This document shows, piece by piece, positions 1-26,325 of a DNA stretch of 64,000 nt. How positions within the stretch are numbered: position 1 is the stretch's first letter; each line of letters opens with the position of its first letter. The stretch is taken from positions 1 to 64,000 of IMG/VR virus record IMGVR_UViG_3300003877_000001; one strand, 5' to 3'. The notes beneath the pieces are model-generated. The model was not told the DNA's origin, did no database searches, and was given only the letters and a program-made list of their open reading frames with translations. Both the position numbers and the translations under genes were made by a program.

Positions 1-1018
1 TTGCAGTGAAATTAATTGTACCTGCGGTTATACCAACTTCTTGTATATTTGTAGTATCATCTGCAAACGTATTATCAGGTGCAACTAATGTTGGAAAAAA
101 TGTTGTTACTAACATTTCTTCAATAATATTTTCTACGGTTCTACCTGTTAAAACAGTACCTGTTGTAATTCCACCAACATCAATATTTGAAGGTGATGCA
201 CTATTATAAATTCCAGTAGCACCTGATGATGTAATTATTACAGTGTCACCAGATGTTGTTACATTTGTATTACCAGAACCTAATAATGTTCTTATTTGTG
301 CAGTTTCACCATTAATACCACTTGTTATTCCTGAAAATATTTCACCAGTACCCAAACCAATATTTTCCATACTACTAATACCTGATGTTACACCACCACC
401 TGTTGCTCCTGATGATATTACAAAACCTCTATATTGATAGATTAATGCACTATTATTATCAAAAGTTACCAATATTGGTTTTGATATTTGACCAAATACT
501 GTTGGATCTGTTGATTGTATTCCACCTGCTGTACTTGTTGAAAGATAATATGTTGTACTTGGATTTAAAACAAGTCCACTTATACTAGCACCCTCAAGAT
601 AACCAGCATATACTACAATAAATTCATCAATAGTATTAACCTGACTAACAAAACCAATTACCTCACCACCTTGTGTACCATCAGCAATTGCTTTAATATA
701 TGTACCACCAGAATATGTGATGACATCACCAATTCCAAAACCGTGTGCAACTTGATTAACAATTTTTTCAATTCTTTCACCAGAACCACTTCCACCACCA
801 GAACCCTTAATAACTAAGTTACCATTACTTACACCTAATTCATACCAATATTCAACATTAGCAATATTAACTGTCAATCCTAAATACCTTTGAGCAATAG
901 GAATCTTGGTATTAACTTCATTAGTGTCAATATATGGTGAATTAGCAGCACTAAGATATTTTTCATCTATTGGTGCACCTACATTTATCTTTAAATTATC
1001 ACTTAATTGTATTGCCAT
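1..1018 (-). CDS. Virion structural / tail-fibre-like protein, 3' end runs off the window (not in ORF track)
   Basis: ATG at 1016-1018; my translation MAIQLSDNLKINVGAPIDEKY... stays open to base 1; G/T/S-rich; shares the GxYNxASPS..VGGI..GT.LTG module with 1021..2085. Confidence 0.75.
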   Translation of the reverse strand, partial: MAIQLSDNLKINVGAPIDEKYLSAANSPYIDTNEVNTKIPIAQRYLGLTVNIANVEYWYELGVSNGNLVIKGSGGGSGSGERIEKIVNQVAHGFGIGDVITYSGGTYIKAIADGTQGGEVIGFVSQVNTIDEFIVVYAGYLEGASISGLVLNPSTTYYLSTSTAGGIQSTDPTVFGQISKPILVTFDNNSALIYQYRGFVISSGATGGGVTSGISSMENIGLGTGEIFSGITSGINGETAQIRTLLGSGNTNVTTSGDTVIITSSGATGIYNSASPSNIDVGGITTGTVLTGRTVENIIEEMLVTTFFPTLVAPDNTFADDTTNIQEVGITAGTINFTA

Positions 1019-1020
1019 AA

Positions 1021-2085
1021 TTAATTATTTCTAAATTCCATATAAGTTGAATTAACTTGTTTATTACTCAAATATATTTTATATTGTATTCCATTCCAAT
1101 ATGCACTAGGTGAATCTACATTTGGTATTGCAGGGTCTGGGAATAAATTACCTGCTGGAGAAACTGCACCACCAATAGTACCATTATCTAATCCATTTAC
1201 ATACCATTTTAGTTTTGATGTTGATGTACTTGGAATTGCAAACCATATATAATCATCTGGTGTTCCAGCGAAACTATTTACTACAATAGTTCCATTACTA
1301 TTTCCAACAACAATATTTCCATTATCTATTAATGATTGTGCTGTTACTGGATTAGTAGGATCAGGTCTATTACTACCTGAAGGTGCACCACCTGAACTTA
1401 TCTTTCCAAAAAACCAAGGATAAATTGATGTTATTGTATAATTCTTTTGTCCCATAGGATTAGCTTCAGTATTTGTACCCTTAACACCCCATGTATGTGA
1501 TATTGGAATATTATTATTTATTGTTATTCCTAATGCTAAACTTTCATTACCATCATTTGCGAGTCCAGTACCTAAAATAGCATTACCATTAGTAACATCA
1601 ATAATTTCAATACTGTTAGGTTGAACATTTCCAGAATTTGTTGTGTTCCAATTAAATGTTTTTGAACCTGACCATGAAACTGGATTACCTACTTGATTTA
1701 ATAAACTAATATTATTATTAAATAAAGTAAATGTTGGTACTTGATATACTACTAATAAATCTTCCCATAGTTGTTCTAATGGTTTACCTGTAAGTGTAGT
1801 ACCTGCTGGAATACCACCAACAGTTATTGTAGATGGTGATGCTAAATTATAAAATCCTGTTCCACCAGATGTTGATGGTTCTAAAACTATTCTACTTAAT
1901 GAATCGTTATATGTTAAAACATAACCATTAACTAATGCACTTGATCCTGTGATAGTTGCATCAATTTCTACACCTTTAGATTGAAGAATACCAACAAAAT
2001 TAGTTGTACCACTAAGCGTTAAAGTTGTGCCAGCTAATTGTTTAAATTGTTCATCAATAAGTTCTGGTCTTGTGAAAAATGGCAT
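1021..2085 (-). CDS. Virion structural / tail-fibre-like protein
   Basis: 354 aa, G/T/N/S-rich beta-type composition; GTATTTAT motif upstream at 2178-2185; paralogous module with the downstream gene. Confidence 0.65.
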   Translation of the reverse strand: MPFFTRPELIDEQFKQLAGTTLTLSGTTNFVGILQSKGVEIDATITGSSALVNGYVLTYNDSLSRIVLEPSTSGGTGFYNLASPSTITVGGIPAGTTLTGKPLEQLWEDLLVVYQVPTFTLFNNNISLLNQVGNPVSWSGSKTFNWNTTNSGNVQPNSIEIIDVTNGNAILGTGLANDGNESLALGITINNNIPISHTWGVKGTNTEANPMGQKNYTITSIYPWFFGKISSGGAPSGSNRPDPTNPVTAQSLIDNGNIVVGNSNGTIVVNSFAGTPDDYIWFAIPSTSTSKLKWYVNGLDNGTIGGAVSPAGNLFPDPAIPNVDSPSAYWNGIQYKIYLSNKQVNSTYMEFRNN

Positions 2086-2225
2086 ATTATATATTTTATT
2101 TCCTTTCTAATTAACGTAACACATTGACCGTCCAGTGAGTTACAAAAAAAATCGAAGTTTATATCGATTATTTGTATATAAATACATAATAAAAATAAAG
2201 AAAACCAGAATATTTTAGATTAAAC

Positions 2226-2260
2226 AAAAAAAAACCCATAGGAATGTCCTATGGGTTTTT
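2226..2260. terminator. Bidirectional intrinsic terminator
   Basis: A-run, CCCATAGGA-atg-TCCTATGGG 9-bp stem, T-run. Confidence 0.8.
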
Positions 2261-2321
2261 AAATCAAACTATTAACTAATTTCGGGAGAACCTAATCACC
2301 ATTTTTACAAGCAGGGCTTTC

Positions 2322-2362
2322 TAGCTGACAAAACCACCTCTCATAGGTGGTTTTGTCAACTA
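2322..2362 (-). terminator. Hairpin downstream of the tRNA (terminator or processing stem)
   Basis: TGACAAAACCACCT-ctcat-AGGTGGTTTTGTCA, 14-bp perfect stem. Confidence 0.6.
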
Positions 2363-2371
2363 TTTTATATG

Positions 2372-2458
2372 TTGCGAGTGCTGGACTCGAACCAGCGTAA
2401 ACCCAAAAGGGACTCCGTGCTTATGAGACAGGCGAGATACCAACTTCTCCAACTCGCT
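2372..2458 (-). tRNA. tRNA with CAU anticodon (Met-like), atypical long variable arm, CCA not encoded
   Basis: Cloverleaf by eye: acceptor GCGAGT/ACTCGC with a 1:72 mismatch, D arm GAGA-AGTTGGTA-TCTC, loop CT-CAT-AA, T arm GCTGG-TTCGAGT-CCAGC; 87 nt. Confidence 0.9.
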
Positions 2459-2559
2459 AATCTTAAATATTTTTAGTAGGTTACGTTTCAGGGACTAAAG
2501 GGAATATTTTCACCCAATAGTTTGAAAGAGGTTTTTACCTACTATAATTTCTTTTTAAA

Positions 2560-3380
2560 TAAAACTCTGAGACTACAAGTTTAACAATAGGTCTTGAGAG
2601 CATTATCTTATTCTCTCATTGTCCAATGCAGTTGCCCACATTATCCTATCATCGCAAGTTAATTACGTTAACCAATCGTATCGTTACATTTTCTACTGCT
2701 GTTTCATATCTATCTCACCCGTTTCAGAGCAAACTAACTAGATCGACTAGAATAAACATCCACAACAAATATTCGGATTGGCTACCGACTTACCCCACCT
2801 CAATGGCGAGTTATGCGACTTTCTAATGCAACGCCTAAACACTTGTGCTTTTATATTGATATAAAATCTGTTTTGATCTAAATTCAAAAGATTATAAAAT
2901 TTACAGCTAATTCGGAGTTTTGAAGTCGTGGTTTAGGATGCAGTTGCCCGTCTTTTGAACGATCAATGCTGCACGACTCCATGCGTATACCAATCCGCAA
3001 TTAATAACCTTCCTGACTTATTTCCCCACCCGAAGATGGTTGTGTTCGCCTTACGGTTTAAGTTACCAACTGGTTGCTTGCCCTTCATCCTTGGTAGGAA
3101 TTATGAACATCAACCCTACATTTACATTTATTGTATTTTCATACTCAACTATGCAGTCCTTTCTGCATAATCTATGTCTTCATCTGGTTAGACCGTTAGG
3201 CACTCCCCAAAAGAAGGAAGATGTATTGTAGTGCTTATTTGAGGTCGCAAGCGACCCGATAGAGTGGACAATTAGCATTTCCACCTAACCCTTATCCCGA
3301 TTTCTCGGTTTATCTTTTCAATACCCGAAGGTAATGAACTTACTATCCGAAGACAGCAGGGAGCATAAGCACCCCCAAAA
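2560..3380 (-). ncRNA. Large structured non-coding RNA (GOLLD-class candidate), boundaries approximate
   Basis: No credible ORF; GC-richer than flanks; many stems capped by UUCG/GNRA loops (TAC-CTTCGG-GTA, CCGA-GAAA-TCGG, CC-GTAA-GG, GTAT-GAAA-ATAC, TATGCAG/CTGCATA); long-range helices GTGCTTAT/ATAAGCAC and AGTCGTG/CACGACT; directly upstream of a tRNA. Confidence 0.75.
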
Positions 3381-3390
3381 GTTTTCAATA

Positions 3391-3402
3391 TATTAAAGAA
3401 CG
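3391..3402 (-). promoter_or_regulatory. boxA-like antitermination element
   Basis: CGTTCTTTAATA resembles the rrn boxA TGCTCTTTAACA and lies between the promoter and the ncRNA. Confidence 0.55.
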
Positions 3403-3516
3403 TTTTCTTAATAAGTGGAGTTGATAGGTCTTACACCTATACCTGCACCTCACAGGTGCTATACTAATTTATACTACATCCCCATAATTTATTACCTTTA
3501 CTTCTTAAAGGTGTTG

Positions 3517-3547
3517 CAAATGTAAAATACTTAAATTTAATATGCAA
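3517..3547 (-). promoter_or_regulatory. Bacteroidota primary-sigma promoter for the ncRNA-tRNA unit
   Basis: TTG-N20-TACATTTG matches the -33/-7 consensus TTTG-N19-21-TAnnTTTG. Confidence 0.7.
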
Positions 3548-3600
3548 GTATTTTGTAAAATATTTTAAAACTTTTATTTTTTGTTTTTGTGTGATAATAA

Positions 3601-3627
3601 ATACGGATTTATTCCTCAAAGGTTACA
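3601..3627 (-). promoter_or_regulatory. ECF-like promoter motif
   Basis: TGTAAC-N16-CGTAT; the motif recurs at 9856, 33906, 57295, 57347 and 57867. Confidence 0.5.
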
Positions 3628-3653
3628 AAAAATTCCATTTTTTTATAAATAAT

Positions 3654-5276
3654 TTAATTATTTTTCATAACATTTTGACTTTCACGTTGTTGTCTTAATA
3701 TTTCAGTTAAATCTGTTTTAGATTTATCTCCAATATCTTCTCCTTCGTGAAGATTTTTCAATATTTCTTTACCATTTTCAATAGCAATAGGTTTAATGTG
3801 TTCAATATTTTCATTACTATTATTTATTTCATCTGCTTCATTTTCACTACGTGCTTTATATCTTTCACTTATTTCTTGATTTAAATTATCTATTTTTTCT
3901 TCAGTAATTGTAGGTAAATTAATTCTAGTAGGATCATTAACTGGATCAGTCAATGCTATTTCCATAGTATCATTATTAAATATACAATCTTTAAATACAT
4001 GTCCATCACTTGCCATTCTTGCTTTTAGAATAGCAATATTAGCTTGTCCTATTAATTTTTGTTCTTGAGTTTTTGCAACAGACATCAAAAAATGTGTTTT
4101 TTGTGCACGTTTTATATTACCACCCATTTGACCTGTATCTACTAATTCAGAACCAAATCCACTTCTATTAGTTTGAAGTGCAGTCCAACATGGAATATCT
4201 AATTCATGTGCCATACCTTCAAATGATTTAACTATTTGAAGTTCACCAGCATTTTGATCTAAACCTCTTGTATGTGGTTCTAGGACATCCAAATAATCTA
4301 ATATTATAATATCAAACGATAACCCAAATTTCTTTTTATATCTATTAACATATTGTCTAACTTTAGGCATTGTGGTATCTTCCTGCGAAAATTTCTTTAT
4401 TATTAATTTACCAAATATATTTTCTTTGTGCCAATCAATAATTTTATCATTTACCTTAACTAGATTATCATCCATTTCAGATAGTGGGATTTTAGACCAT
4501 TTAGCAAAATGTTTTCTCCTAATATCATCTTCTTTATCTTCAAAAATAATTTGTAAAACATTTAACCCTAAATTATATGCAGTATTTGCAATATATGTTA
4601 ATATTGTTGATTTACCAACACCTGATGGTGCTAATATAATTCCAATCTCACCACCACCGAGACCACCATTAGTTAACGTATCAATACCTTTAATACCTGT
4701 TGGTATTGGTTTACGAAATTCTTTAGTAAGTGCTCGACTAATATTATCCATAATTTCGATACCCATATCATCTTCATCACCAATCTCACCGATTTTCTTT
4801 AAGTCATTTTCAACATTAAATAAAAATTCATCACTATTATTACCTTGTTTAACTTCACCTTGAATATAGGATGCTATTTTTCTATATTCTTGTTGTTTAA
4901 TAAAATTTAATGTTTCCTTTTGAATTGTATCACCATCATGTTGAAGTTCTTTATTTAAAACTCTTTCGTTCCAATTATTTAATTGGATTGCAACTGCATC
5001 CAATAAATCAATTTCAATAGGGTCATTTTTTTTACTGAATTTTCTAATTGCATGTAAAATACTTTTATTTTGTAAATTAGGTGGTTTACCATTTAATTCA
5101 AAATATTGTTGTATTATAGAAAAAAATCTTTTAAATGTAGCATCATCAAAATACGATATTTCTAATAATGGAATTGATTTTTCTGCAAATTCTGGTTCAC
5201 TTACTAATTGCCATAAAATTTTTAATTGAAATTCAGCACCTAAATATTGTGAAATAGTATATTCATCTCCCATCAT
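3654..5276 (-). CDS. dnaB: Replicative DNA helicase (DnaB / T4 gp41-like)
   Basis: IPTGIKGIDTLTNGG, Walker A APSGVGKS, IIILDYL, TALQTNR. Confidence 0.9.
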   Translation of the reverse strand: MMGDEYTISQYLGAEFQLKILWQLVSEPEFAEKSIPLLEISYFDDATFKRFFSIIQQYFELNGKPPNLQNKSILHAIRKFSKKNDPIEIDLLDAVAIQLNNWNERVLNKELQHDGDTIQKETLNFIKQQEYRKIASYIQGEVKQGNNSDEFLFNVENDLKKIGEIGDEDDMGIEIMDNISRALTKEFRKPIPTGIKGIDTLTNGGLGGGEIGIILAPSGVGKSTILTYIANTAYNLGLNVLQIIFEDKEDDIRRKHFAKWSKIPLSEMDDNLVKVNDKIIDWHKENIFGKLIIKKFSQEDTTMPKVRQYVNRYKKKFGLSFDIIILDYLDVLEPHTRGLDQNAGELQIVKSFEGMAHELDIPCWTALQTNRSGFGSELVDTGQMGGNIKRAQKTHFLMSVAKTQEQKLIGQANIAILKARMASDGHVFKDCIFNNDTMEIALTDPVNDPTRINLPTITEEKIDNLNQEISERYKARSENEADEINNSNENIEHIKPIAIENGKEILKNLHEGEDIGDKSKTDLTEILRQQRESQNVMKNN

Positions 5277-5278
5277 TA

Positions 5279-5308
5279 TTGTTTACTTGTTTTTACTTGT
5301 TTTTACTT
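5279..5308 (-). repeat. Short 10-bp tandem repeat in the helicase leader
   Basis: AAGTAAAAAC x2 plus AAGTAAAC directly before the ATG. Confidence 0.6.
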
Positions 5309-5407
5309 CTAGAATAATACATCTAGTACATTAGTCTACGTATATATTCAAAACGCTAGAGTTAACTTTCCAACTATAGGTTTATAAAAATATAACAGGA
5401 ATTTGTG

Positions 5408-6073
5408 TTAATTATTTAATTGTTGATGAGTTTGATTACAATAATGAGATTTAATCATTTTAATATAGCTTCTATCAGTTGATTTTTCAATCATTTCACT
5501 TCTTCTATTTTTGGATAGTTCTCTTATTTGATTTACATATAATCCATATATGTTAATCAAAGTGTAATCATCCCACATATGATTAACATCTAACTCTTTT
5601 AAAGATTCATGTATATCATCAATAATTTCATTAATAATTTCTCTTATTTCAATAGAAAATCTCGAAGCAGGGTTATAATTATCAACATAAAATTTCCTCT
5701 CAACAATAGGATTATCATTAATATATAAACCAAATTTACATTCAATACCTTTTATGGTTTTATTACCATATTTATATTTAATAAAATTTGGTTTAGATAG
5801 TTTATTTTCATCAATACAATATAAATCTATTAATTTCTTATAATTTTCTAAGAAATCATACCCATAATCCTTATAATTTAAATTTCTTCCTGACATAACT
5901 CTTTGTAGATTTTGAATTATTTCAGGAATGGAATCCCGAATGTCAACCGAATATCTAATTATGGGATTAAAAACATCTGCATTGAATATTCTTTCAATTA
6001 TTATGTCTTTACCTTGATAAAGGACAAATTTGAATTTATTTGTATGTGATTTTTCTTGTACTTTTTCAGTCAT
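5408..6073 (-). CDS. Hypothetical protein in the replication block
   Basis: 221-aa ORF with its own host-type promoter. Confidence 0.7.
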   Translation of the reverse strand: MTEKVQEKSHTNKFKFVLYQGKDIIIERIFNADVFNPIIRYSVDIRDSIPEIIQNLQRVMSGRNLNYKDYGYDFLENYKKLIDLYCIDENKLSKPNFIKYKYGNKTIKGIECKFGLYINDNPIVERKFYVDNYNPASRFSIEIREIINEIIDDIHESLKELDVNHMWDDYTLINIYGLYVNQIRELSKNRRSEMIEKSTDRSYIKMIKSHYCNQTHQQLNN

Positions 6074-6140: not shown

Positions 6141-7186
6141 CCATTTACATGTGATTTCTTGTAATCTTTTAACATTTTTTTCTCACTCATTATAATAGGA
6201 TAAAATGGTTCTATATAATTAACAAAGTTACCATTATATACTGTTAAAAATTCGTCTTCAATCATCATATTAATTAAATTTTTAGAATTTCTATTTTCAT
6301 CATTTAGTGGTAGTGATAGTTGTTCTAATTCTTCTTCAGCATCATCATTTAAAAATGGATCATCTAGATTAATAAGTTGATAATTTAATTTTAATCTATC
6401 TACATTTTCGGTTAAATTTGTAAGTGCTTTTAGTGGTTTCATTTTCTTACTAACACGTTCTTCATTAATCTTATCTGCATTAGTACATATTTCTTTTACA
6501 GATACATATCTATTTGCTAATTCTGGGAAATGTTTTAATAATGTTTTTATTTTTAATCCCTGAATACCTTGAATATTATCCGAGACATCACCTTCAATTA
6601 TTTTCAAAGTTAATCCGTTTTTATAATCATATGGAAAATGTAAGAAGAAATTATGTTTATCTATAATCATATCAATATTATCAAACATAATTTTAATATT
6701 TAATTTTAATAATTGAACAAAATCTCTATCATTGGTATAAATTATAATATCTTCTTTATTATGATTTTCATTGCAATATTCTGCAATTAAATCATCAGCT
6801 TCTACATTAAATACCTCAATTTGTCTTAGAAAAAGTTCTTCTGCATATGCTTGAATTCTCTTACGTTGTTTTAAAACAGATTCGTCTTTTTCTTTCTCTT
6901 TCTTAATATCGTAATCAGACATTACTATTCTATCACCCCAAGTCTTATCTTTTCTATTTGCTTTATATGCAGGATCAATATTGTGTCTATATATACCACC
7001 ATTTTCACCATCCCATGCAAGAACAACTTTATTAATTTGATTCTCTTTAACCAATTTCCTAAGTTTGGTCATAAATTGGTATAACCCACCAATATGACCA
7101 AACTTTGGTGTATAAACATCTTTAGCACCATGAATCGATCTCTTTAATAGAAATGATGAATCAACTAATAATGTTTTTATTTTCAT
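6137..7186 (-). CDS. 5'-3' exonuclease (T4 RNase H / PolA N-terminal FEN family)
   Basis: LLVDSS, LAWDG, YKANR, EADDLIA, TNDRDFVQL, GDVSDNIQGI. Confidence 0.9.
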   Translation of the reverse strand: MKIKTLLVDSSFLLKRSIHGAKDVYTPKFGHIGGLYQFMTKLRKLVKENQINKVVLAWDGENGGIYRHNIDPAYKANRKDKTWGDRIVMSDYDIKKEKEKDESVLKQRKRIQAYAEELFLRQIEVFNVEADDLIAEYCNENHNKEDIIIYTNDRDFVQLLKLNIKIMFDNIDMIIDKHNFFLHFPYDYKNGLTLKIIEGDVSDNIQGIQGLKIKTLLKHFPELANRYVSVKEICTNADKINEERVSKKMKPLKALTNLTENVDRLKLNYQLINLDDPFLNDDAEEELEQLSLPLNDENRNSKNLINMMIEDEFLTVYNGNFVNYIEPFYPIIMSEKKMLKDYKKSHVNG

Positions 7187-8295
7187 GTAACTTCACCTGT
7201 TTCAGTATCTACATTTTCTAGAAAAGATAAATCCTCATCATTTCTTATTGATACAAATTTAGTTGCAATATCATTTAAATCAACATCACCACCTAATGCA
7301 TCTCTAAAGAATTTTAAATTATTTTTCTTATAAGTATCAATATCATCCTTATCTGTACCAATAAATCCATGTTTAGTTGAAATAAGTTTACCTTCCATAT
7401 TTATACCACCTAAAGCACCGTCTATCTGATTCTTCACAATTGCTACTTTTGATTCAATTCCATAGGCAACATCTCTTCCTTTGCTAGTAGCCGTTACTTT
7501 TCTAGTTCCATGTGATTGAATACCACCATGATGATATATTAATCTTGCTCCAAAGAAAAACGCTTCACCACCTTTATGTTTTACAACACCAGCACCTTGC
7601 ATTGAATCTAACCATATTTTTTGTACACCAATAATTGTATTTATATATGGTTTATTTTCTTTTCTTGAAGATGGTATTCTACTATTTAATAGATATTTAA
7701 ATGATCTTTCAAAAGCACCTGCATTCCACATATTATTATCAGAAGTCCCTTTATCTGCTGCATTAATACTTCTAACACAATCTAAACTACCAAGAGAATC
7801 TATAATAATACATAAGTTGTTTTGTAATTCACCTGAATCTTGTAAATTAAGAAAATGTGTTATACAATCAGCCATATCTTCTATTGCTGCTTCTGATCTG
7901 TTTTTATCTTTTACTTTTCCAAAATGTTTTAACAAATAATCATTTCTAATCATTATTACTTCATTAACATCTAACCCCATTGCTGTTAATCTATCTTCAC
8001 CAATATTATTCTCAGTGTCAATAAATATAACTAAATCACCTTCCTTTTGTGCTGCAACTGCTGCTTCTGATACTGATGTTGATTTACCTGTATTTGAAAA
8101 ACCACGTGCAAGTGATACGTATCCTTTAGGAAAACCGGGTAATCCTGTTGCTTTTTGTAAAGCACTAGATGTTTTATACCAATTTAATTGTTTATCTTTA
8201 ATTATTTCAGTTCCTGTTTTTTTTCTAAAATCATCTAATGAAAATGATTTTTTATTGGTAGGTTTTCTTTTACCACCTTTAGGTATATCGCTCAT
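7183..8295 (-). CDS. RecA/UvsX-like recombinase
   Basis: Walker A GFSNTGKS, FIDTEN, IIIDSLG, GGEAFFF. Confidence 0.88.
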   Translation of the reverse strand: MSDIPKGGKRKPTNKKSFSLDDFRKKTGTEIIKDKQLNWYKTSSALQKATGLPGFPKGYVSLARGFSNTGKSTSVSEAAVAAQKEGDLVIFIDTENNIGEDRLTAMGLDVNEVIMIRNDYLLKHFGKVKDKNRSEAAIEDMADCITHFLNLQDSGELQNNLCIIIDSLGSLDCVRSINAADKGTSDNNMWNAGAFERSFKYLLNSRIPSSRKENKPYINTIIGVQKIWLDSMQGAGVVKHKGGEAFFFGARLIYHHGGIQSHGTRKVTATSKGRDVAYGIESKVAIVKNQIDGALGGINMEGKLISTKHGFIGTDKDDIDTYKKNNLKFFRDALGGDVDLNDIATKFVSIRNDEDLSFLENVDTETGEVT

Positions 8296-15264: not shown

Positions 15265-15909
15265 CTAAGGTTTTAACATTAAAACTACTAGGTATCTTTT
15301 TAATTCTTCGAAAAAAGGAAAAATTTTATATTGTTTTTGATAGATAGAACCATCTATATCGTGTTTTGTTGTAATACTTCTATCAATAAGAATAGATGTT
15401 AATTTATCTAGATTAAAATTAAAATATTCATACATTTTTAAATCAATACCAAATATATTATTATTATTATCTAATATGTAAATCATTTCATCCTTATATT
15501 GAAATGTATTAAATTTTTCATTAGGTAGTATATTTTTAAAATTTTCTAAATTAGATATTTTATCAAATATGGGATCAATATTTTTATATGTATATTTACC
15601 TCTAAAATAATAATACGGTGCATTTCTAACAAACATTTCTATTCCACCTACATGTTGTGCTTTATTTTCATTGAAAGAAAATTCCCAATATAATTGATTT
15701 GATTTGATTTCTTTATTTAGAATTGATATTTTATCATGGAAATCATTGAGTGTTACTTTAAACTGATTCCACCCTACAAACAATATTGGTATATCTGTTG
15801 GTATATTTAAATCATTACCACCATTTTTCATATCAATATAATTAATATAATCAACCTTAGTATGATTAACTAATTCATCTTCATATATAATATTACCTAT
15901 TTTGAACAT
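15265..15909 (-). CDS. Hypothetical protein
   Basis: 214-aa ORF, translationally coupled to the end of the glycan operon. Confidence 0.65.
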   Translation of the reverse strand: MFKIGNIIYEDELVNHTKVDYINYIDMKNGGNDLNIPTDIPILFVGWNQFKVTLNDFHDKISILNKEIKSNQLYWEFSFNENKAQHVGGIEMFVRNAPYYYFRGKYTYKNIDPIFDKISNLENFKNILPNEKFNTFQYKDEMIYILDNNNNIFGIDLKMYEYFNFNLDKLTSILIDRSITTKHDIDGSIYQKQYKIFPFFEELKRYLVVLMLKP

Positions 15910-16688
15910 TAAATTTTATCATTATCTACAACAACAACCCCCTTTTGTGTAACAACATATGATGCACATCTGTTTGCAAAATTAATTGCAGATGCAATAT
16001 CGTTATTTTCTAGATAATCCGCAACAAAACTAGCTAAAAATGTATCACCAGCTCCTGATAAATCTCGAACTTCTGATTTGTTTTTAATTGGGTGTATTAT
16101 AGTTGTTCCTAATGTCTTATCATAATGTTTAGCACCCTCTTTTCCTAGTGTTGTTATAAGATGATTTTTAAACCCATATAACTCATCTTCATTTTCCAAA
16201 TATTCTTTTTCATTAATTTTAATGAAATTAATATCATTTGCCCAACTACCTATTTTTTTCTTAGTATCTAGAAATGTTGGTATTTTATGTCCCTTACAAT
16301 ATGTAACTATTTTAAATATAATTTCTTCATCTAAAAACCCTTTATTATAGTCAGAGATAACAACACCATCCCAATGCGTTAGTTTTAATTTACCCCAAAA
16401 ACTTTTTAATGGTTTAACTTTATCTTCAGTATCTATACGTAAAAGCATTTGATTTGATACTTCATCAACATATCTTACTTTTGTAGGTTTATCTGAATCG
16501 TTTGTAATAATATCAACATGAACATTCAATGCTAATAAATTATTTAATACATTTTCAGCCATACCTACATTACTTTCCGTATTTGTTGGTTCAAATATTG
16601 GTACTGGTGCTTCAGGACTTATTCTATTACATTTTCCATATTGGAATACATCCAAACAACTATCTCCTATTACTAATACTTTTTTCAT
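15909..16688 (-). CDS. PfkB-family sugar kinase, heptose-7-phosphate kinase (RfaE/HldE domain I)-like
   Basis: VIGDSCLD, RISPEAPVP, SDYNKG, DLSGAGDTFLA. Confidence 0.85.
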   Translation of the reverse strand: MKKVLVIGDSCLDVFQYGKCNRISPEAPVPIFEPTNTESNVGMAENVLNNLLALNVHVDIITNDSDKPTKVRYVDEVSNQMLLRIDTEDKVKPLKSFWGKLKLTHWDGVVISDYNKGFLDEEIIFKIVTYCKGHKIPTFLDTKKKIGSWANDINFIKINEKEYLENEDELYGFKNHLITTLGKEGAKHYDKTLGTTIIHPIKNKSEVRDLSGAGDTFLASFVADYLENNDIASAINFANRCASYVVTQKGVVVVDNDKI

Positions 16689-17701
16689 AATTCTTTTAGT
16701 ATTTTTACTATCTTTTCTGAAGCATGTCCATCACCAAATGGTGATTCATATTTAATAATTGAATTGTTTATATATTTTTCAAATATATCTGGTAATTCTA
16801 ATGGTGATTTAACCATTCTTGTAGAATATCCTATTGCTTCGGGTCTTTCCGTTACTTTTCTGCAAGTTAAACAAATTTTATTTAAAAAGCTACATTCTTC
16901 TTGTATCCCACCTGAATCAGTTATAACTAATCTTGAATTTACTAAAACATCTAATAGTTCATCATGATCTAATGGTTCAATTATTTTAATGTTTGGTGCA
17001 TCAATGAATACTTTATTTATTTGAACTTTTGGGTTTGGATGCATTGGAAATATAAAATTAAGATAATTATGTTTTTTTGCTATTTCATTTATTAATAAAA
17101 ACCACTCTTTCATCCAATGATGATTTTCTCTTCTATGGAGTGTAATTAAAATATCGTTGCTACCTGTAAATGTTTTTAATTTTTCTTTCCAAGGTAATAG
17201 ATTATCTAATCCTGTATTTCCCACAACATATATATCACCTTCTGTTTTTTCTCTTTCTAAGTACGTTTTAGATAAATCTGTTGGACATAAATGTATATCA
17301 GCAATTGATGACACTATACGTCTATTTGTTTCTTCTGGATATGGGTTTTTCTTATCAAATGTTCTTAATCCAGCTTCAAGATGAATTACTTTTATTTGAT
17401 GATGAAATGCAGACAATGCAACGGCTAATACTGATGTCGTATCGCCTTGTACTAAAACATATTTTAATGTTGGTTCTAATCTAATTATAGATGTTAATTC
17501 ATTCATTATTGAACTAACTATTGAATCTAAACGATTTTCACCATCTTTAATTGATATTACATAATCTGATTTAAAATCAGCAATATTTAAATGTTGACCA
17601 GTAAATAGTATTTTATAATCAATATTATTTTTTATAAACTCTTTAATTAAAGGTTTAATTTTCAAATATTCTGGTCTTGTTCCAAATGTTAATAGTATCA
17701 T
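16685..17701 (-). CDS. wecB: UDP-N-acetylglucosamine 2-epimerase
   Basis: FGTRPEYLK, TGQH, VQGDT, HLEAGLRT, PYPEE, TLHRREN, TDSGGIQEE, PFGDG. Confidence 0.93.
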   Translation of the reverse strand: MILLTFGTRPEYLKIKPLIKEFIKNNIDYKILFTGQHLNIADFKSDYVISIKDGENRLDSIVSSIMNELTSIIRLEPTLKYVLVQGDTTSVLAVALSAFHHQIKVIHLEAGLRTFDKKNPYPEETNRRIVSSIADIHLCPTDLSKTYLEREKTEGDIYVVGNTGLDNLLPWKEKLKTFTGSNDILITLHRRENHHWMKEWFLLINEIAKKHNYLNFIFPMHPNPKVQINKVFIDAPNIKIIEPLDHDELLDVLVNSRLVITDSGGIQEECSFLNKICLTCRKVTERPEAIGYSTRMVKSPLELPDIFEKYINNSIIKYESPFGDGHASEKIVKILKEL

Positions 17702-18399
17702 AAGTTTTCAATTATTTTTTTTACATATTGAATATCATCATCATTTAATTGTTTATTGGTATATAATGATTTATACCATGTTTCCGTTATCATACCACCC
17801 CTTCTAAGTATATGCCCAAAATCTAAAACATGTTTTTTATCAGTACCTAATATGATAGCACCATCATTTTTTGCAACATCTCTTAATTCCCATTCCCAAG
17901 GAGAAATTCCTAATTCAAAATATTTCATAAAATATGATGTTCTCCATACACCATAATGTAACGATAATCTATATTCCCCATTATTAGGTAATTTAATAAA
18001 ATTATAATCATTCCCATTTTTATAAATATCATTACCATATACACTTGGTGCAGCAGATGTTAAACAGATTTTTACTACTTTGTCATCATTATCCATTAAT
18101 TTTTTAAATTCATTTATCATTTCAATATTTAATTCATCAACTGCAACAATATCATCATTACCATATATAAAATATTCATCTTTAAAATCTTTAAAAAAAT
18201 TATATATATCATTAGTGAAATTATCTGCACCATTATCATTACCCAAACAAAAAAACTTCCAATTACCCATATCAAATTCAGGTTTTTTATATCCTAAAAT
18301 AGTAATGTCTAAATTTGAACCGCCAAATTTATCCATTGTATATTTATTAGCTTCTAATATATTACGATATTTATCACATGTAGGTATTATTATTTTCAT
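17698..18399 (-). CDS. Putative glycosyltransferase (GT-A-like)
   Basis: IIIPTCDKY N-terminus, YGNDD, SPWEWE; glycan-cluster context. Confidence 0.55.
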   Translation of the reverse strand: MKIIIPTCDKYRNILEANKYTMDKFGGSNLDITILGYKKPEFDMGNWKFFCLGNDNGADNFTNDIYNFFKDFKDEYFIYGNDDIVAVDELNIEMINEFKKLMDNDDKVVKICLTSAAPSVYGNDIYKNGNDYNFIKLPNNGEYRLSLHYGVWRTSYFMKYFELGISPWEWELRDVAKNDGAIILGTDKKHVLDFGHILRRGGMITETWYKSLYTNKQLNDDDIQYVKKIIENL

Positions 18400-19391
18400 T
18401 ATCTATTCGATTTAATACCCTGTAATTCATCCATCCAATGATCAACCATTTCATGCATCATTATCTCAAATGAATATTCTGGTTTCCAACCTAAAACATT
18501 TCTTGCTTTTGTTGAATCACCCTTTAGATATGGTAACTCTTCTGGTCTAATAAATTTAGGGTTTTGTACTACATAATCTTTATAATTCATATCTAAATAA
18601 CTAAAAACAACATCACACATTTCACGAACTGAATGTGTTTCCATTGTTGATATAACAAAATCGTCTGCAATATCATGATTAATTACTTTATGCATTGCAC
18701 GAACATAATCTTTTGAATGCCCCCAATCTCTATAAGAATCAATATTCCCTAATTCTAGTTTATCTGCCTTTCCTAATTTAATCATACATGCAATTTTAAC
18801 TACTTTATTTGTAACAAAATTACTTCCTCTTCTTGGTGATTCATGATTAAATAATATTCCGTTGGTTGCGTGTAAATTATAAGCACGTCTATAATGACGA
18901 ACCATATTATATGAGAATACTTTAGCACAACCATAAGGAGATACTGGATTCATTAATGTAGTTTCTCTTTGAAACTTATCATTCTCAACAGTTAAACCAA
19001 ACATTTCAGATGAACTTGCTTGATAAAATTTAGCATCAGGGCAAAGTCTTTTATACGCTTCTAATATATTAACAACACCCAACGCATTTGTTTGTACTGT
19101 AAATTGTGGTATATCAAAACTAATTCTAACGTGTGACTGAGCACCTAAATTATATATTTCATCGGGCATTATTTCGGTTAATAGACGTTCTATTGATGTT
19201 TGATCTAATAAATCACCATAATGTACGTACATATTTTTATTACTTCTTAAACCTTCAATCCTATATTGTTGGTTTTCAGCAACAGAGTTTCTTCTAATCA
19301 TTCCATGTACTTCATATCCTAGTGATAATAAATATTCACTAAGATAACTACCATCTTGACCACTAATTCCTGTTATAAACGCTTTTTTCAT
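18399..19391 (-). CDS. gmd: GDP-mannose 4,6-dehydratase
   Basis: ITGISGQDGSYL, AQSHVRISF, YQASSSEMFG, SPYGCAK, GILFNHESPRRG, RDWG. Confidence 0.95.
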   Translation of the reverse strand: MKKAFITGISGQDGSYLSEYLLSLGYEVHGMIRRNSVAENQQYRIEGLRSNKNMYVHYGDLLDQTSIERLLTEIMPDEIYNLGAQSHVRISFDIPQFTVQTNALGVVNILEAYKRLCPDAKFYQASSSEMFGLTVENDKFQRETTLMNPVSPYGCAKVFSYNMVRHYRRAYNLHATNGILFNHESPRRGSNFVTNKVVKIACMIKLGKADKLELGNIDSYRDWGHSKDYVRAMHKVINHDIADDFVISTMETHSVREMCDVVFSYLDMNYKDYVVQNPKFIRPEELPYLKGDSTKARNVLGWKPEYSFEIMMHEMVDHWMDELQGIKSNR

Positions 19392-19408
19392 ATTTTATAT
19401 TTATTTTA

Positions 19409-20140
19409 CTATATTCTTATATTTTTTATCATTTCTTCAATATCTGGATACATCGTACTATTTCCACTATCTTCATTTTCTTCAGGTACACTATCCATTA
19501 ATATTATTCCTCTTGCTGCATCTTCAGGTGTCATATACATATGATATCCCTTTGTTTTTATATGATTACAATCATTATATGATACTGTCAGATCTCTACC
19601 ATCATAACTCATTAATTTTAACATCTTTGCTGCTTCCTTATCATCAGTTAAAATAATACCACCCTTACCAATTGGTATTCTTTTCTTTATTTGAAAAGAT
19701 ACAACCTGTAATGCATTATTTCCAACATACATGTCTTTAGTCCAACGTACTGCACCATCATATACTCTAGTAGGATTTAATCGATAAATTCCACTCCATT
19801 CATAATCTTTAAACTCATAATCTAATCCTACTTGATTAATTAACATAGGTAATGAAACATATGTTCTATTAGGTATGGTTATTTTAGGATGAATATTCCA
19901 TTCAACCATTATTTCACCAATATTCATTAGATATTTTAATGATAAAAACATACCATTTGTACAACAATCAGTTAAAATACCATATTTTGCACCTGCAAAT
20001 TCAGCAACTTTTTGTTCAAACATGTCAATCACTTCTCTTGGGTCGTTCCAATAATAACCCATTTCTTTTATTATGTCAAGTTCTGGACGTTGTAAATGTT
20101 TGGGTATTTGACCTAAAGGATAACTATCATATTTTTCCAT
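19409..20140 (-). CDS. DegT/DnrJ/EryC1/StrS-family aminotransferase (short)
   Basis: FEQKVAEFAGAKY, SFQIKK, GKGGIILTDD, MTPEDAARG. Confidence 0.8.
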   Translation of the reverse strand: MEKYDSYPLGQIPKHLQRPELDIIKEMGYYWNDPREVIDMFEQKVAEFAGAKYGILTDCCTNGMFLSLKYLMNIGEIMVEWNIHPKITIPNRTYVSLPMLINQVGLDYEFKDYEWSGIYRLNPTRVYDGAVRWTKDMYVGNNALQVVSFQIKKRIPIGKGGIILTDDKEAAKMLKLMSYDGRDLTVSYNDCNHIKTKGYHMYMTPEDAARGIILMDSVPEENEDSGNSTMYPDIEEMIKNIRI

Positions 20141-20990
20141 TCTTTATATTTTTTATTTCATTTTTTAATATCCAATCATTCATTTTAATATGTCTCATTT
20201 TAGGATAAACTACAATACCATTACATAATAGTGCAGATGCATAACTAAAAGAACTTATAGATAATACTAATAATTTAGCATTTATCATTCTAATAAACAT
20301 TTCATTTGAACTAATTTCATCATCATATATTATTTTATATTTATTATATGGTTTTGGATTAAAATTCAATCTTTGTGTGGTTATTATTATGTTTTCATTT
20401 CCATTTTTTGTTAATGTATCTAATATATTTAAATAATAATCATCGTTTAATATTCTATTTTGATATTTTACAATGTCTGATCTTCTAATATGTATGATTA
20501 TTTCGTTTGACATTTCATGTTTAAATTGAAATAATGAAAATATCTTACTTCTATATTTTTTCATTATTTCAATACTTAAATCTTTTCTATCTAAATGTTT
20601 ATGTAATGTTGATATTAAATATATTTTATTTTTATGTTCATTATTTTTTATTTCTCTAACTACTTGGGTCATATCACCTTTAACAATAGTAAAATCATTT
20701 AAAATTATATTATTAACATCAACACCCACATAATTTAATGTTTTATCCCATTCATTAGCACTCTTAATATACCCTTCTCTATTCCATGTACTATAATTTT
20801 TTGATCTTGTTTTTTCACCAGCAAGAAAATTAACACCAAACCCTTCATATGATAGTGGAACATTTAAGTATTCAATATCTTTAGAATATTCTTCATTTAA
20901 ATAATATGCAAACGCACAAACATTGAAAATTCTTTGAACTCTAGCACCCATTCCATCTTGTGCTATATTACATGCAATATATGTTTTCAT
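20127..20990 (-). CDS. GT11 (alpha-1,2-fucosyltransferase)-like glycosyltransferase
   Basis: IHIRRSD (cf. HVRRGD) and SISSFSYASA (cf. SNSTFSWWAA). Confidence 0.6.
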   Translation of the reverse strand: MKTYIACNIAQDGMGARVQRIFNVCAFAYYLNEEYSKDIEYLNVPLSYEGFGVNFLAGEKTRSKNYSTWNREGYIKSANEWDKTLNYVGVDVNNIILNDFTIVKGDMTQVVREIKNNEHKNKIYLISTLHKHLDRKDLSIEIMKKYRSKIFSLFQFKHEMSNEIIIHIRRSDIVKYQNRILNDDYYLNILDTLTKNGNENIIITTQRLNFNPKPYNKYKIIYDDEISSNEMFIRMINAKLLVLSISSFSYASALLCNGIVVYPKMRHIKMNDWILKNEIKNIKNGKI

Positions 20991-22734: not shown

Positions 22735-23153
22735 TATATAAACCTTTTATCTAATTCTTGACCCTCATAAGGACCTGTCTTATATTCATATACTATGGTA
22801 TTATCTTCCAATATTTCATATGTATGACCACCATACAATGTAAATGAAGCATCCCCAACTTTAAGTGTTGGTGTTGCAATAACATTATCATTAATATCAT
22901 AAAAAGTACATTTAACACTACCATTAATAATCACCCAAGATTCTTGTGCAATTTGATTTTCATATGTTCTTTTCTTCTTAATATGTTTATGTGGTTTAAA
23001 TTTCTTACCTTTTTTCATTTTTAGTGAAGAACACTGAATAAAATTATCTTCAGGTACTAATTCAACTCTAGTTTCTTGTTTTTTTATATCATCTAATCTT
23101 CTTATAATATGAAGAAGTAATTTTGGATCTACTTTTGAATATATTTTTTCCAT
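22734..23153 (-). CDS. WbuC-like cupin-fold protein
   Basis: FKPHKH, QESW, GGHTYE, KTGPY. Confidence 0.75.
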   Translation of the reverse strand: MEKIYSKVDPKLLLHIIRRLDDIKKQETRVELVPEDNFIQCSSLKMKKGKKFKPHKHIKKKRTYENQIAQESWVIINGSVKCTFYDINDNVIATPTLKVGDASFTLYGGHTYEILEDNTIVYEYKTGPYEGQELDKRFI

Positions 23154-26323: not shown

Positions 26324-26325
26324 AT

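What the first reader, a model, noticed from the sequence alone, without database searches (positions are those of the whole stretch)
2560..3380. Giant ornate non-coding RNA (~820 nt) co-transcribed with a tRNA
Seen: an ORF-free, GC-richer block dense in hairpins with UUCG/GNRA loops, nested multibranch closing helices (GTGCTTAT/ATAAGCAC around ~130 nt; AGTCGTG/CACGACT), and an 11-nt motif GGGCAACTGCA present twice (~2627 and ~2939). It has its own promoter and ends next to a tRNA. Established: GOLLD RNAs are ~800-nt phage-associated RNAs often next to tRNA genes, and GOLLD and ROOL RNAs assemble into multimeric RNA cages of unknown function. Inference: a GOLLD member or a new class in a large Bacteroidota phage.
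Basis: partly seen in the sequence, partly recalled or inferred. Interest (0 to 1): 0.85.

Follow-up and report, generated by a model that had tools for sequence, protein, structure and literature searches.

The report
Divergent GOLLD RNA in jumbo phage
The ORF-free block is a real but unusually divergent copy of GOLLD, a known ~800-nt phage RNA that self-assembles into hollow RNA cages of unknown function, and here it sits in one transcription unit with an odd initiator-like tRNA in a 326-kb phage.

Summary
Observation confirmed.

- **Identity.** Rfam's GOLLD model (RF02032, 3' domain only) matches window 2981..2564 (-) at 171.8 bits (cut-off 150, E 1.6e-46). No intron, RNase P or ROOL model matches.
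- **5' domain.** The upstream 400 nt (3380..2982) carries a 24-nt motif also present in the cryo-EM GOLLD env-38. All 28 IMG/VR loci tested that have both this motif and a GOLLD 3' domain scored 241-324 bits.
- **Covariation.** In an 18-sequence alignment, 69 of 89 predicted pairs show compensatory changes. 95.6% of cells are paired, against 34-45% when partners are slid.
- **Divergent clade.** The window RNA and its only two close relatives (L003, L005) score 160-181 bits. They have extra 5' hairpins, a shorter distal 5' region and a changed P21b loop.
- **Transcription unit (inferred).** A conserved Bacteroidota-type promoter (TTG-N20-TAnnTTTG), a degenerate tRNA-His-like element, GOLLD, an 88-nt initiator-derived tRNA(CAU) with a long variable arm, then a terminator.
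- **Not supported.** The 11-nt repeat is real but not conserved.
- **Side finding.** GOLLDs in related loci almost always flank a CAU tRNA, often an initiator type.

Verdict: new member of a known kind. Function remains unknown.

The parts
3517..3547 (-). Putative promoter: -33 TTG (3545-3547) and -7 TACATTTG (3517-3524), 20 nt apart
   Evidence: TTG-N20-TAnnTTTG is kept at the same place in window, L003 and L005 while the surrounding intergenic sequence diverges. The match to the Bacteroidota sigma-A consensus is from my own knowledge. TAnnTTTGC is not enriched window-wide.
3415..3483 (-). Degenerate tRNA-His(GUG)-like element in the 5' leader
   Evidence: Called only at ARAGORN's relaxed threshold. 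It has an A-A mismatch in the acceptor stem, a weak D stem and a non-canonical T loop. ARAGORN's default run and Rfam did not call it. It is absent from L003 and L005.
3382..3406 (-). Invariant 25-nt box just 5' of the GOLLD P1 helix (role unknown)
   Evidence: Identical in window, L003 and L005 and present once in the window. Related GUUCUUUGAAU boxes precede P1 in other GOLLD clades.
2982..3380 (-). GOLLD 5' domain (not covered by the Rfam model)
   Evidence: In the three-sequence alifold, 34 of 109 pairs are compensatory. It shares a 24-nt motif (3128-3151) with env-38 and 44 IMG/VR stretches. nhmmer aligns both domains to 25 loci. In the 18-sequence alignment, 69 of 89 pairs are compensatory, with 95.6% of cells paired against 34-45% when partners are slid.
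2564..2981 (-). GOLLD 3' domain (Rfam RF02032, full model 1-416)
   Evidence: 171.8 bits against a gathering score of 150, E 1.6e-46. The three-sequence alifold gives 122 pairs, 25 of them compensatory.
2851..2921 (-). Internal A/U-rich linker of the 3' domain (the disordered, cage-interior linker in env-38)
   Evidence: Aligned to the unpaired linker of the Rfam model. Positions 2864-2923 are 97-100% identical between window and L003. It contains UCUUUUGAA (2883-2891), complementary to the first-hairpin loop UUCAAAAGA (2951-2959). It can also form a local hairpin.
2459..2563 (-). Spacer between GOLLD and the tRNA, with a long hairpin at about 2478-2544 (read by eye, not folded)
   Evidence: Sequence read. 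It is not conserved in L003 or L005. No terminator-like site lies here on the minus strand.
2371..2458 (-). 88-nt tRNA, anticodon CAU, with initiator-like acceptor and D stems and a long variable arm
   Evidence: ARAGORN and Rfam tRNA, 42.5 bits. Features: A1xA72 mismatch, G2-C71, C3-G70, G4-C69, A11:U24 and A73. Only one G-C pair is kept at 29-31:39-41, and there is a C28xC42 mismatch. Long-arm homologues are in L010, L019, L028 and L024; normal-length homologues are in L004, L008, L011, L012, L016, L025 and L030.
2222..2260 (-). Intrinsic terminator (14-bp stem followed by a U run)
   Evidence: It is the only terminator-like site on the minus strand between 3700 and 2100.

Best explanation
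Window 3380..2564 (minus strand) encodes an ~817-nt GOLLD RNA that belongs to a small, divergent clade of that family.

**Shown**
- The 3' half matches the curated GOLLD model.
- The 5' half is homologous to canonical GOLLD 5' domains, and its helices are kept by compensatory substitutions.
- The gene lies in a 326-kb myovirus-like phage, directly downstream of the replicative helicase gene and next to a CAU tRNA.

**Inferred from the layout**
- A host-type (Bacteroidota-like) promoter at 3547-3517 drives one transcript.
- That transcript carries a degenerate tRNA-His-like element, GOLLD, a 105-nt spacer and an initiator-derived tRNA(CAU), and ends at the terminator at 2260-2222.
- RNase P and 3'-end tRNA processing at the flanking tRNA(-like) structures would free the GOLLD RNA.

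**Inferred from the solved GOLLD structures (Kretsch 2025; review PMC12990946)**
- The RNA folds into a 5' 'cap' domain and a 3' 'ring' domain and self-assembles, without protein, into a dihedral hollow cage of about 10-14 copies, with the A/U-rich linker inside.
- The self-complementary dinucleotide of the P21a loop is kept (CG here, GC in relatives). This is the known signature of one contact between the two half-shells.
- The P21b self-kissing loop is replaced, so the copy number may differ from env-38's 14.

**Biological role**
- It is unknown for the whole family.
- My best guess is a scaffold or compartment that serves the phage's translation-support module (tRNAs, initiator tRNA, tmRNA) during infection.
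For: - **Rfam.** GOLLD at 171.8 bits against a gathering score of 150, full-length model; no other large-RNA family matches.
- **Close homologues.** L003 and L005 score 181 and 160 bits at the same position after the helicase gene.
- **5' domain.** 34 of 109 pairs are compensatory in three sequences. The 24-nt motif is shared with env-38 and found in 44 IMG/VR stretches. Of the 32 tested, 28 carry a GOLLD 3' domain at 241-324 bits. nhmmer aligns both domains. In 18 sequences, 69 of 89 pairs are compensatory; 95.6% of cells are paired against 34-45% slid and 76% permuted.
- **3' domain.** 25 of 122 pairs are compensatory within the clade.
- **P21a loop.** CG in the window, GC in L003, L005 and the canonical loci. 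This matches the GC/CG switch reported for bridge B8 (PMC12286853).
- **Promoter, terminator and tRNA.**
- **Phage context.**
- **Family knowledge.** Cage assembly and variable stoichiometry within the family: PMC12286853 and PMC12990946.
Against: - The score is only 22 bits above Rfam's cut-off, against 241-324 bits for typical members.
- The P18/P19 region aligns poorly.
- The conserved P21b loop CUCGGCAG is replaced by UGAAAC/UGAAAG.
- The distal 5' domain is about 45 nt shorter, and two hairpins are added near the 5' end. Cage formation and copy number therefore cannot be taken for granted.
- Only three members of the clade were found in IMG/VR, JGI metagenomes and GTDB genomes.
- No expression data exist.
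- The transcript ends, the processing steps and the function are all inference.
Confidence: 0.72

Rival explanations
1. It is a GOLLD homologue that no longer builds a closed cage. In this view it acts as a monomer or small oligomer, for example as a structured spacer or processing scaffold of a tRNA operon, or through base-pairing of its conserved linker.
For: - The P21b self-kissing loop is lost.
- The Rfam score is low.
- The linker is nearly invariant between window and L003.
- The linker carries a 9-nt complement to the first-hairpin loop; about 0.1% of linker shuffles reach this.
- tRNA(-like) elements lie on both sides.
Against: - Most helices and the A-rich loops of the 3' domain are kept, as is the palindromic P21a dinucleotide.
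- S. agalactiae GOLLD lacks P21b entirely and still forms a dodecamer (PMC12990946).
- The linker complement can equally be satisfied by a local hairpin.
Confidence: 0.15
2. It is a decaying relic of a GOLLD gene with no present function, left over in a phage lineage whose relatives carry only tRNAs at this position.
For: - In about 25 helicase relatives the same position holds tRNAs and no GOLLD.
- The score is close to the threshold.
- The neighbouring tRNA-like elements look degenerate.
Against: - Three contigs from different samples keep the whole ~820 nt with compensatory changes in both domains.
- They also keep a conserved promoter.
- Indels fall in loops and hairpin tips, not at random.
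Confidence: 0.06
3. It is not GOLLD but a different class of large RNA (group I or II intron, RNase P, ROOL, tmRNA) or a protein-coding region.
For: None found. The only support is that the block is large and structured.
Against: - No Rfam hit to any of these families, even at E up to 5.
- The full-length GOLLD model matches.
- No ORF exceeds 71 aa.
- Indels of 1, 11 and 15 nt between homologues are incompatible with a conserved reading frame.
Confidence: 0.01

Closest known systems
GOLLD RNA (Rfam RF02032; Weinberg et al. 2009), in particular env-38, whose 14-mer cage was solved by cryo-EM (PDB 9MEE; Kretsch et al. 2025)
   Same: - Length of about 820 nt and a two-domain architecture.
- Full-length match to the 3'-domain model.
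- A shared 5'-domain core: the P1-type closing helix, the GAAA hairpin followed by GGAUAARG, the UAGUUGAG-GNRA hairpin-CAAUAA motif and the CUUAAAC element.
- A UCAAAAG loop on the first 3'-domain hairpin.
- A palindromic dinucleotide in the P21a loop.
- The terminal GUAGUCUCAG motif.
- A phage setting beside a CAU tRNA.
   Different: - It scores 172 bits against 241-324 for canonical members.
- Two extra UUCG hairpins follow the P1 5' strand.
- The motif lies about 170 nt from the 3' domain rather than about 215 nt.
- The P18 and P21a hairpins are shorter.
- The P21b loop is UGAAAC instead of the self-complementary CUCGGCAG.
- The tRNA lies 106 nt away rather than 14-46 nt, and it is an aberrant long-arm form.
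- The host is probably a Bacteroidota member.
Streptococcus agalactiae GOLLD (700 nt; dodecamer, PDB 9L0R; the 3' domain alone forms a decamer, 9LMF)
   Same: It shows that GOLLDs with reduced or altered 5' elements, and without P21b, still form cages, and that the copy number follows such differences (PMC12990946). The window RNA likewise departs at P21b and in the distal 5' domain.
   Different: The window RNA keeps a P21b hairpin (with a different loop) and a full-size ~400-nt 5' domain.
ROOL RNA (phage and prophage cage-forming RNA, octamer)
   Same: It is a large ornate RNA encoded by phages, located near tRNA genes, that forms an RNA-only cage.
   Different: Its sequence and fold are unrelated, and no Rfam ROOL match was found in the window.
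Bacterial initiator tRNA-fMet (compared with the neighbouring tRNA)
   Same: CAU anticodon, no Watson-Crick 1:72 pair, G2-C71/C3-G70/G4-C69, A11:U24 and discriminator A73 (the criteria are from my knowledge of RajBhandary's work).
   Different: It has a 17-19-nt variable arm. Only one of the three G-C pairs of the anticodon stem is kept, and there is a C28xC42 mismatch.

Membership tests
GOLLD RNA (RF02032) | Covariance-model score at or above Rfam's gathering score for the conserved 3' domain | tested here: met
   171.8 bits against 150, model positions 1-416 of 416, E 1.6e-46. This is 22 bits above the cut-off; typical members score 241-324 bits.
GOLLD RNA (RF02032) | Helices of the 3' domain maintained by covariation | tested here: met
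   Within the three-member clade, 25 of 122 alifold pairs change on both sides and stay paired. There are few non-canonical pairs in the Rfam alignment, apart from the weakly aligned P18/P19 region.
GOLLD RNA (RF02032) | A ~400-nt structured 5' domain joined to the 3' domain (variable between subgroups) | tested here: met
   - It shares a motif with env-38 and with 28 Rfam-confirmed GOLLD loci.
- nhmmer alignments span both domains.
- 69 of 89 consensus pairs are compensatory in 18 sequences; the window keeps 65 of them, 11 fall in gaps and 13 are non-canonical.
- A direct computed alignment to env-38 was not possible, because no reference for that sequence was available.
GOLLD RNA (RF02032) | Total length around 700-850 nt with an internal unstructured A/U-rich linker | tested here: met
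   About 817 nt (3380..2564), with a 71-nt linker at 2921..2851 aligned to the model's unpaired linker.
GOLLD RNA (RF02032) | Phage or prophage location, next to tRNA genes | tested here: met
   A 326-kb phage contig with phage genes. A tRNA(CAU) lies 106 nt downstream and a tRNA-like element upstream.
GOLLD RNA (RF02032) | Self-complementary dinucleotide (GC or CG) in the P21a loop (inter-shell bridge B8 of env-38) | tested here: met
   The window loop is UCGAU (CG). L003 and L005 have GCAU (GC), and the canonical loci have CGCAA (GC). The criterion comes from PMC12286853. I mapped env-38 residues 656-657 to this loop by inference, because the stored copy of the env-38 sequence is about 17 nt short.
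GOLLD RNA (RF02032) | Conserved self-kissing P21b loop (bridge B9 of env-38) | tested here: not met
   The canonical loop GCUCGGCAG is replaced by CUCUGAAACGGG (window, L003) or UAUGAAAGGAA (L005). This feature is not defining for the family as a whole, because S. agalactiae GOLLD lacks P21b. It bears on copy number, not on membership.
GOLLD RNA (RF02032) | RNA-only homo-oligomeric cage (10-, 12- or 14-mer) | not testable with these tools
   This needs mass photometry or cryo-EM of the transcript.
GOLLD RNA (RF02032) | Expression rising during phage lytic growth | not testable with these tools
   No transcript data are available. Only a conserved promoter-like element and a terminator were found.
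ROOL, group I/II introns, RNase P RNA, tmRNA | Match to the family's covariance model | tested here: not met
   No hit at gathering thresholds in the whole window, nor at E up to 5 in 1800-4200.
Bacterial initiator tRNA (for the neighbouring tRNA) | CAU anticodon, 1:72 mismatch, A11:U24 and three consecutive G-C pairs at 29-31:39-41, on a normal short variable loop | tested here: inconclusive
   The first three features are met (A1xA72, A11:U24, CAU). Only G30-C40 is kept of the three G-C pairs. The variable arm is 17-19 nt. Normal-length homologues in related phages have two of the three G-C pairs. It is derived from an initiator-type gene, but its present function is uncertain.

The most novel reading that the evidence does not exclude
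The window clade would be a remodelled GOLLD that builds a cage of different geometry or copy number than the solved 12- and 14-mers. Its differences are a changed 5' cap, a new P21b loop and a conserved linker that can pair with the first-hairpin loop. More broadly, GOLLD and an initiator-type tRNA(CAU) would form a conserved functional module. GOLLD would then act on translation initiation or on the storage or protection of initiator tRNA during infection. That would give the first concrete functional lead for this RNA family.
Probability: 0.15. Interest if true: 0.75.

Novelty: new member of a known kind. Interest (0 to 1): 0.4.

Why it matters
GOLLD is one of the few natural RNAs known to form protein-free cages, and what it does is unknown.

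- **A natural variant near the detection limit.** This copy scores just above the curated model's cut-off. It has a remodelled 5' cap and one replaced inter-shell loop, so it can be used to test how sequence sets cage geometry.
- **Under-counting of the family.** This clade, together with a sister group that falls below the Rfam threshold (L041, L045-L048), shows that the family is wider than current annotation finds.
- **A testable link to tRNA.** A CAU tRNA, often of initiator type, sits next to GOLLD in many related loci, and an aberrant initiator-derived tRNA sits next to it here. This can be tested, but it does not by itself reveal a function.

Otherwise the finding is an annotation of a known RNA family.

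Tried and rejected
- **Phage database search.** blastn of 2200-3650 against 50,697 phage records gave no match. The phage is distant from all isolates; its helicase reaches at most 27% identity.
- **P14 helix pattern.** Searching IMG/VR for the outer-helix pattern found L031, L033 and L036, which carry no GOLLD even at E 0.001. I treated these as chance matches.
- **Clade-specific 5' motif.** A 17- or 20-mer from the clade's 5' domain found only the same three contigs in IMG/VR, JGI metagenomes and GTDB genomes. No deeper alignment of the clade could be built.
- **Gaps in helicase relatives.** The 850-950-nt gaps between tRNAs in L013, L019 and L020 have no GOLLD hit.
- **11-nt repeat.** It is real but not conserved in L003 or L005. 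I rejected it as a functional repeat.
- **Loop-linker complement.** The 9-nt complement between the first-hairpin loop and the linker beats shuffles in window and L003. It is weak in L005, weaker (4-5 nt, not above shuffles) in canonical GOLLDs, and explained equally well by a local linker hairpin. I left it as a lead only.
- **GOLLD-tRNA complement.** GOLLD GUGCUUAUG is complementary to the tRNA's CAUAAGCAC, which includes the anticodon. About 0.25 such matches are expected by chance and it is not conserved, so I rejected it.
- **Promoter motif.** TAnnTTTGC is not enriched across the window, so the promoter call rests on positional conservation only.
- **Window 1-1017.** I suspected a second structured RNA here. 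It is the start of a minus-strand ORF that runs off the contig end.
- **env-38 alignment.** The comparison was made by eye and through the shared motif.
- **Custom covariance model.** A whole-domain model was not built because the calibration limits exclude models of about 400 positions.

Full report
**What is there**

Window 2564-3380 has no ORF above 71 aa. Its G+C is 0.398 in a window that averages 0.27. Rfam's GOLLD model (RF02032) matches 2981..2564 on the minus strand over its full length at 171.8 bits (gathering score 150, E 1.6e-46). The only other curated hit in the 64 kb is a tRNA at 2458..2372 on the same strand (ARAGORN: 2458..2371). A permissive scan of 1800-4200 found no intron, RNase P, ROOL or tmRNA match. 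The Rfam model covers only the conserved 3' domain, so the 400 nt upstream (3380..2982) had to be judged separately.

- three CUUCGG loops and GAAA loops;
- the GUGCUUAU/AUAAGCAC closing helix (3365-3372 / 3231-3238);
- the AGUCGUG/CACGACU helix (2972-2978 / 2924-2930, the outer helix of the first 3'-domain hairpin);
- the twice-occurring GGGCAACTGCA (2627-2637 and 2939-2949; 0 of 100 shuffles gave any copy).

**Origin and context**

The helicase protein next door places the window on IMG/VR contig 3300003877_000001, which is 325,854 bp. The helicase coordinates coincide (3654-5276), so the window is that contig's first 64 kb. A second assembly of the same phage, 3300003876_000001, ends at the same point. 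The genes are those of a large myovirus-like phage:
- DnaB-like helicase, 5'-3' exonuclease and UvsX-like recombinase;
- tail sheath and T4-type baseplate protein;
- PhoH with an intein-like insert;
- a sugar-nucleotide cluster.

No isolate is close: blastn found nothing, and the helicase reaches at most 27% identity.

**Close homologues and the 5' domain**

Among 30 helicase relatives in IMG/VR, only L003 and L005 carry a GOLLD at the same position, at 181 and 160 bits. The rest carry tRNAs there, and none of the three re-scanned at E up to 0.001 (L013, L019, L020) shows a GOLLD.

Alignment of the three loci shows continuous conservation from a 25-nt box (3406..3382), through the 5' half, to the terminal GUAGUCUCAG motif. 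The flanks diverge. In the 5' half, 34 of 109 predicted pairs change on both sides and stay paired. In the 3' half, 25 of 122 do so. Indels of 1, 11 and 15 nt sit in hairpin tips.

**Relation to canonical GOLLD**

By eye, the env-38 sequence printed in the supplement of Kretsch et al. shares several 5'-domain elements with the window RNA. One of them, UAGUUGAG-NNN-GRAA-NNN-CAAUAA (window 3128-3151), was used as a search pattern.
- The pattern hit 44 IMG/VR stretches.
- Of the 32 tested with Rfam, 28 carry a GOLLD 3' domain at 241-324 bits, which starts about 215 nt downstream of the motif where I measured it.
- The other four (L045-L048) are discussed below.
- nhmmer with a profile of the three clade members aligns both domains to 25 loci.

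An 18-sequence alignment of 5' domains gives a consensus of 89 pairs.
- 69 pairs have compensatory changes, against 14-25 when partners are slid and 37 +/- 3 (maximum 48) in column permutations.
- 95.6% of cells are canonical pairs, against 34-45% when slid and 76% when permuted.
- The window sequence keeps 65 of the 89 pairs; 11 fall in gaps and 13 are non-canonical, mostly in regions where the clade differs.

The 5' half is therefore a GOLLD 5' domain, not a separate RNA.

**How the clade differs**

- **Score.** 160-181 bits against 241-324 for canonical members.
- **5' end.** Two extra UUCG-capped hairpins follow the P1 5' strand.
- **Distal 5' region.** The distance from the motif to the 3' domain is about 170 nt instead of about 215 nt, so the distal 5' region is shorter.
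- **P18 and P21a.** Both hairpins are shorter.
- **P21a loop.** It keeps a self-complementary dinucleotide: CG in the window, GC in L003, L005 and the canonical loci. This is the GC/CG switch that Kretsch et al. used as evidence for the symmetric kissing contact B8 between half-shells. I mapped their residues 656-657 to this loop by inference, because the stored copy of env-38 is about 17 nt short of 833.
- **P21b loop.** The conserved CUCGGCAG, which forms bridge B9, is replaced by UGAAAC or UGAAAG.

The 2026 review records that S. agalactiae GOLLD lacks P21b and several 5' elements and forms a 12-mer. The 3' domain alone forms a 10-mer, and env-38 forms a 14-mer. Differences of this kind are therefore expected to change copy number rather than abolish assembly.

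**Transcription unit**

This section is inference. Reading 5' to 3' on the minus strand:
- **Promoter.** TTG (3547-3545), 20 nt, then TACATTTG (3524-3517). TTG-N20-TAnnTTTG is kept in all three loci. The match to the Bacteroidota promoter consensus is from my own knowledge. The motif is not enriched window-wide.
- **tRNA-His-like element (3483-3415).** This 69-nt element with a GUG anticodon is called only at ARAGORN's relaxed threshold and is absent from L003 and L005.
- **Invariant 25-nt box**, then GOLLD.
- **Spacer.** 105 nt, with a long hairpin.
- **tRNA (2458-2371).**
- **Terminator (2260-2222).** It is the only minus-strand terminator-like site in the region.

Co-transcription and release by tRNA-processing enzymes is the simplest reading, but it is untested.

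**The tRNA**

It is 88 nt with anticodon CAU and a 17-19-nt variable arm. Its acceptor and D stems have initiator hallmarks: no 1:72 pair (AxA), G2-C71, C3-G70, G4-C69, A11:U24 and A73. Only one of the three anticodon-stem G-C pairs is kept, and there is a C28xC42 mismatch. Related phages have the same gene after the helicase. It has normal length in L004, L008, L011, L012, L016, L025 and L030, and a long arm in L010, L019, L028 and L024. It is therefore an initiator-derived gene that gained a variable arm. What it does now is unknown.

**A wider pattern**

Twenty-nine canonical GOLLD loci have a flanking same-strand tRNA. In 27 of them, the first tRNA on one side has anticodon CAU. The arrangements fall into four groups:
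- **Initiator type, downstream.** In 14 loci of several clades, a textbook initiator-type tRNA (GGG/CCC anticodon stem, mostly A11:U24, and a mismatched or weak U-A 1:72 pair) lies 14-46 nt 3' of the GOLLD.
- **Initiator-like, upstream.** In six loci, an initiator-like tRNA lies 167-416 nt upstream, often after a tmRNA.
- **Ile2-like, upstream.** In six loci of four kinds, the upstream CAU tRNA looks like tRNA-Ile2.
- **Exceptions.** L039 and L064 have tRNA-Leu(UAA).

Env-38 itself is described as lying next to a Met-tRNA gene. The loci are related to each other, so these counts are not independent events. I found no paper in the held library that links GOLLD to initiator tRNA.

**Host**

Support for a Bacteroidota host is indirect. 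It rests on the promoter type and on the phage's GDP-mannose dehydratase. That protein is 72% identical to a gene on a 9-kb contig binned with a Prolixibacteraceae MAG; the next best matches are at or below 51%.

**Verdict**

This is a new, divergent member of a known RNA family, in a new and probably Bacteroidota-infecting jumbo phage. For function I can only adopt the family's current hypothesis of a self-assembling RNA cage. I add the testable notes that this clade alters one inter-shell contact, and that GOLLD and CAU/initiator tRNAs travel together.

Noticed in passing
L039-L080 (e.g. L042 1372-1877, L051 1292-1836, L061 3357-3911, L078 7457-8780); window 2371-3380: GOLLD genes almost always flank a tRNA with anticodon CAU: in 27 of 29 loci that have a flanking same-strand tRNA. 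In 14 loci an initiator-type tRNA starts 14-46 nt after the GOLLD 3' end. In other loci an initiator-like or Ile2-like CAU tRNA lies 167-423 nt upstream. The loci are related to each other, so these are not independent events.
   Followed up: partly
window 2371-2458 (-); L010 7997-8086, L019 7114-7202, L028 4522-4611, L024 8045-8128: These are initiator-derived tRNA(CAU) genes with a long variable arm and a weakened anticodon stem. The same gene has normal length in L004, L008, L011, L012, L016, L025 and L030. To my knowledge an initiator-like tRNA with a class II variable arm has not been described; I did not search for it.
   Followed up: partly
window 3415-3483 (-): A degenerate tRNA-His(GUG)-like element lies in the GOLLD leader. 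It is detected only with relaxed ARAGORN settings and is absent from the two homologous loci.
   Followed up: partly
window 3382-3406 (-); L005 (second copy, by eye, downstream of its tRNA-like element); L051 854-872: A 25-nt box immediately 5' of GOLLD P1 is invariant in the three clade members. Related GUUCUUUGAAU boxes sit at the same place in other GOLLD clades. Its role (processing site, promoter element or part of the RNA) is unknown.
   Followed up: partly
window 2864-2923 (-): The internal linker, which is variable and disordered in canonical GOLLDs, is 97-100% identical between window and L003, while the neighbouring helices are 57-93% identical. It holds a 9-nt complement (2883-2891) to the first-hairpin loop (2951-2959).
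   Followed up: partly
L041 437-670; L045 about 3540-4330; L046 about 3210-4000; L047 about 4720-5500 (-); L048 about 7070-7860: This is a ~790-nt GOLLD-like RNA with the 5' motif, a CUCAAAAGG first hairpin and a terminal GUGUAAUCUCAACC. Rfam does not report it at the gathering threshold in the four loci scanned (L045-L048; L041 was not scanned), and nhmmer matches only its 5' half. The four aligned copies (L045-L048) are 97% identical, and no tRNA lies nearby. It is probably a GOLLD clade below the curated cut-off.
   Followed up: partly
L005 6004-6136; L011 7696-7831: These are tRNA-like genes of about 133-136 nt with normal acceptor and T arms and an internal insert of about 60 nt. ARAGORN does not call them.
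   Followed up: no
L019 6086-6161: ARAGORN calls a 'tRNA-SeC' with anticodon UCA in a related phage. It may be an opal (UGA) suppressor tRNA.
   Followed up: no
L042 463-806, L044 5910-6253, L067 8044-8414, L076 1729-2095, L066 930-1290: Phage-encoded tmRNA genes lie a few hundred nt upstream of many canonical GOLLDs. Freshwater-1 RNA (L061, L050, L069) and a group I intron (L060 4337-4553) also occur in these tRNA islands.
   Followed up: no
window 38275-40116 (+): The PhoH-like ATPase is interrupted by a LAGLIDADG/Hom_end homing-endonuclease segment, which looks like an intein.
   Followed up: no
window 15909-27312 (-): A phage-borne sugar-nucleotide and glycan cluster: PfkB kinase, UDP-GlcNAc 2-epimerase, GDP-mannose 4,6-dehydratase, a DegT-type aminotransferase fused to a GNAT domain, and a GT2 glycosyltransferase.
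   Followed up: no
window 1-1017 (-): A Gly/Thr-rich ORF starts at 1017 and runs off the window start. Two independent assemblies of this phage (139 kb and 326 kb) both end within 5 nt of window position 1, which suggests a genome end or an assembly-breaking repeat there.
   Followed up: partly
window 3364-3372 and 2416-2424 (-): GOLLD's GUGCUUAUG is complementary to CAUAAGCAC of the neighbouring tRNA, that is, the anticodon plus the 3' side of the anticodon arm. About 0.25 such matches are expected by chance, and it is not conserved in relatives.
   Followed up: yes
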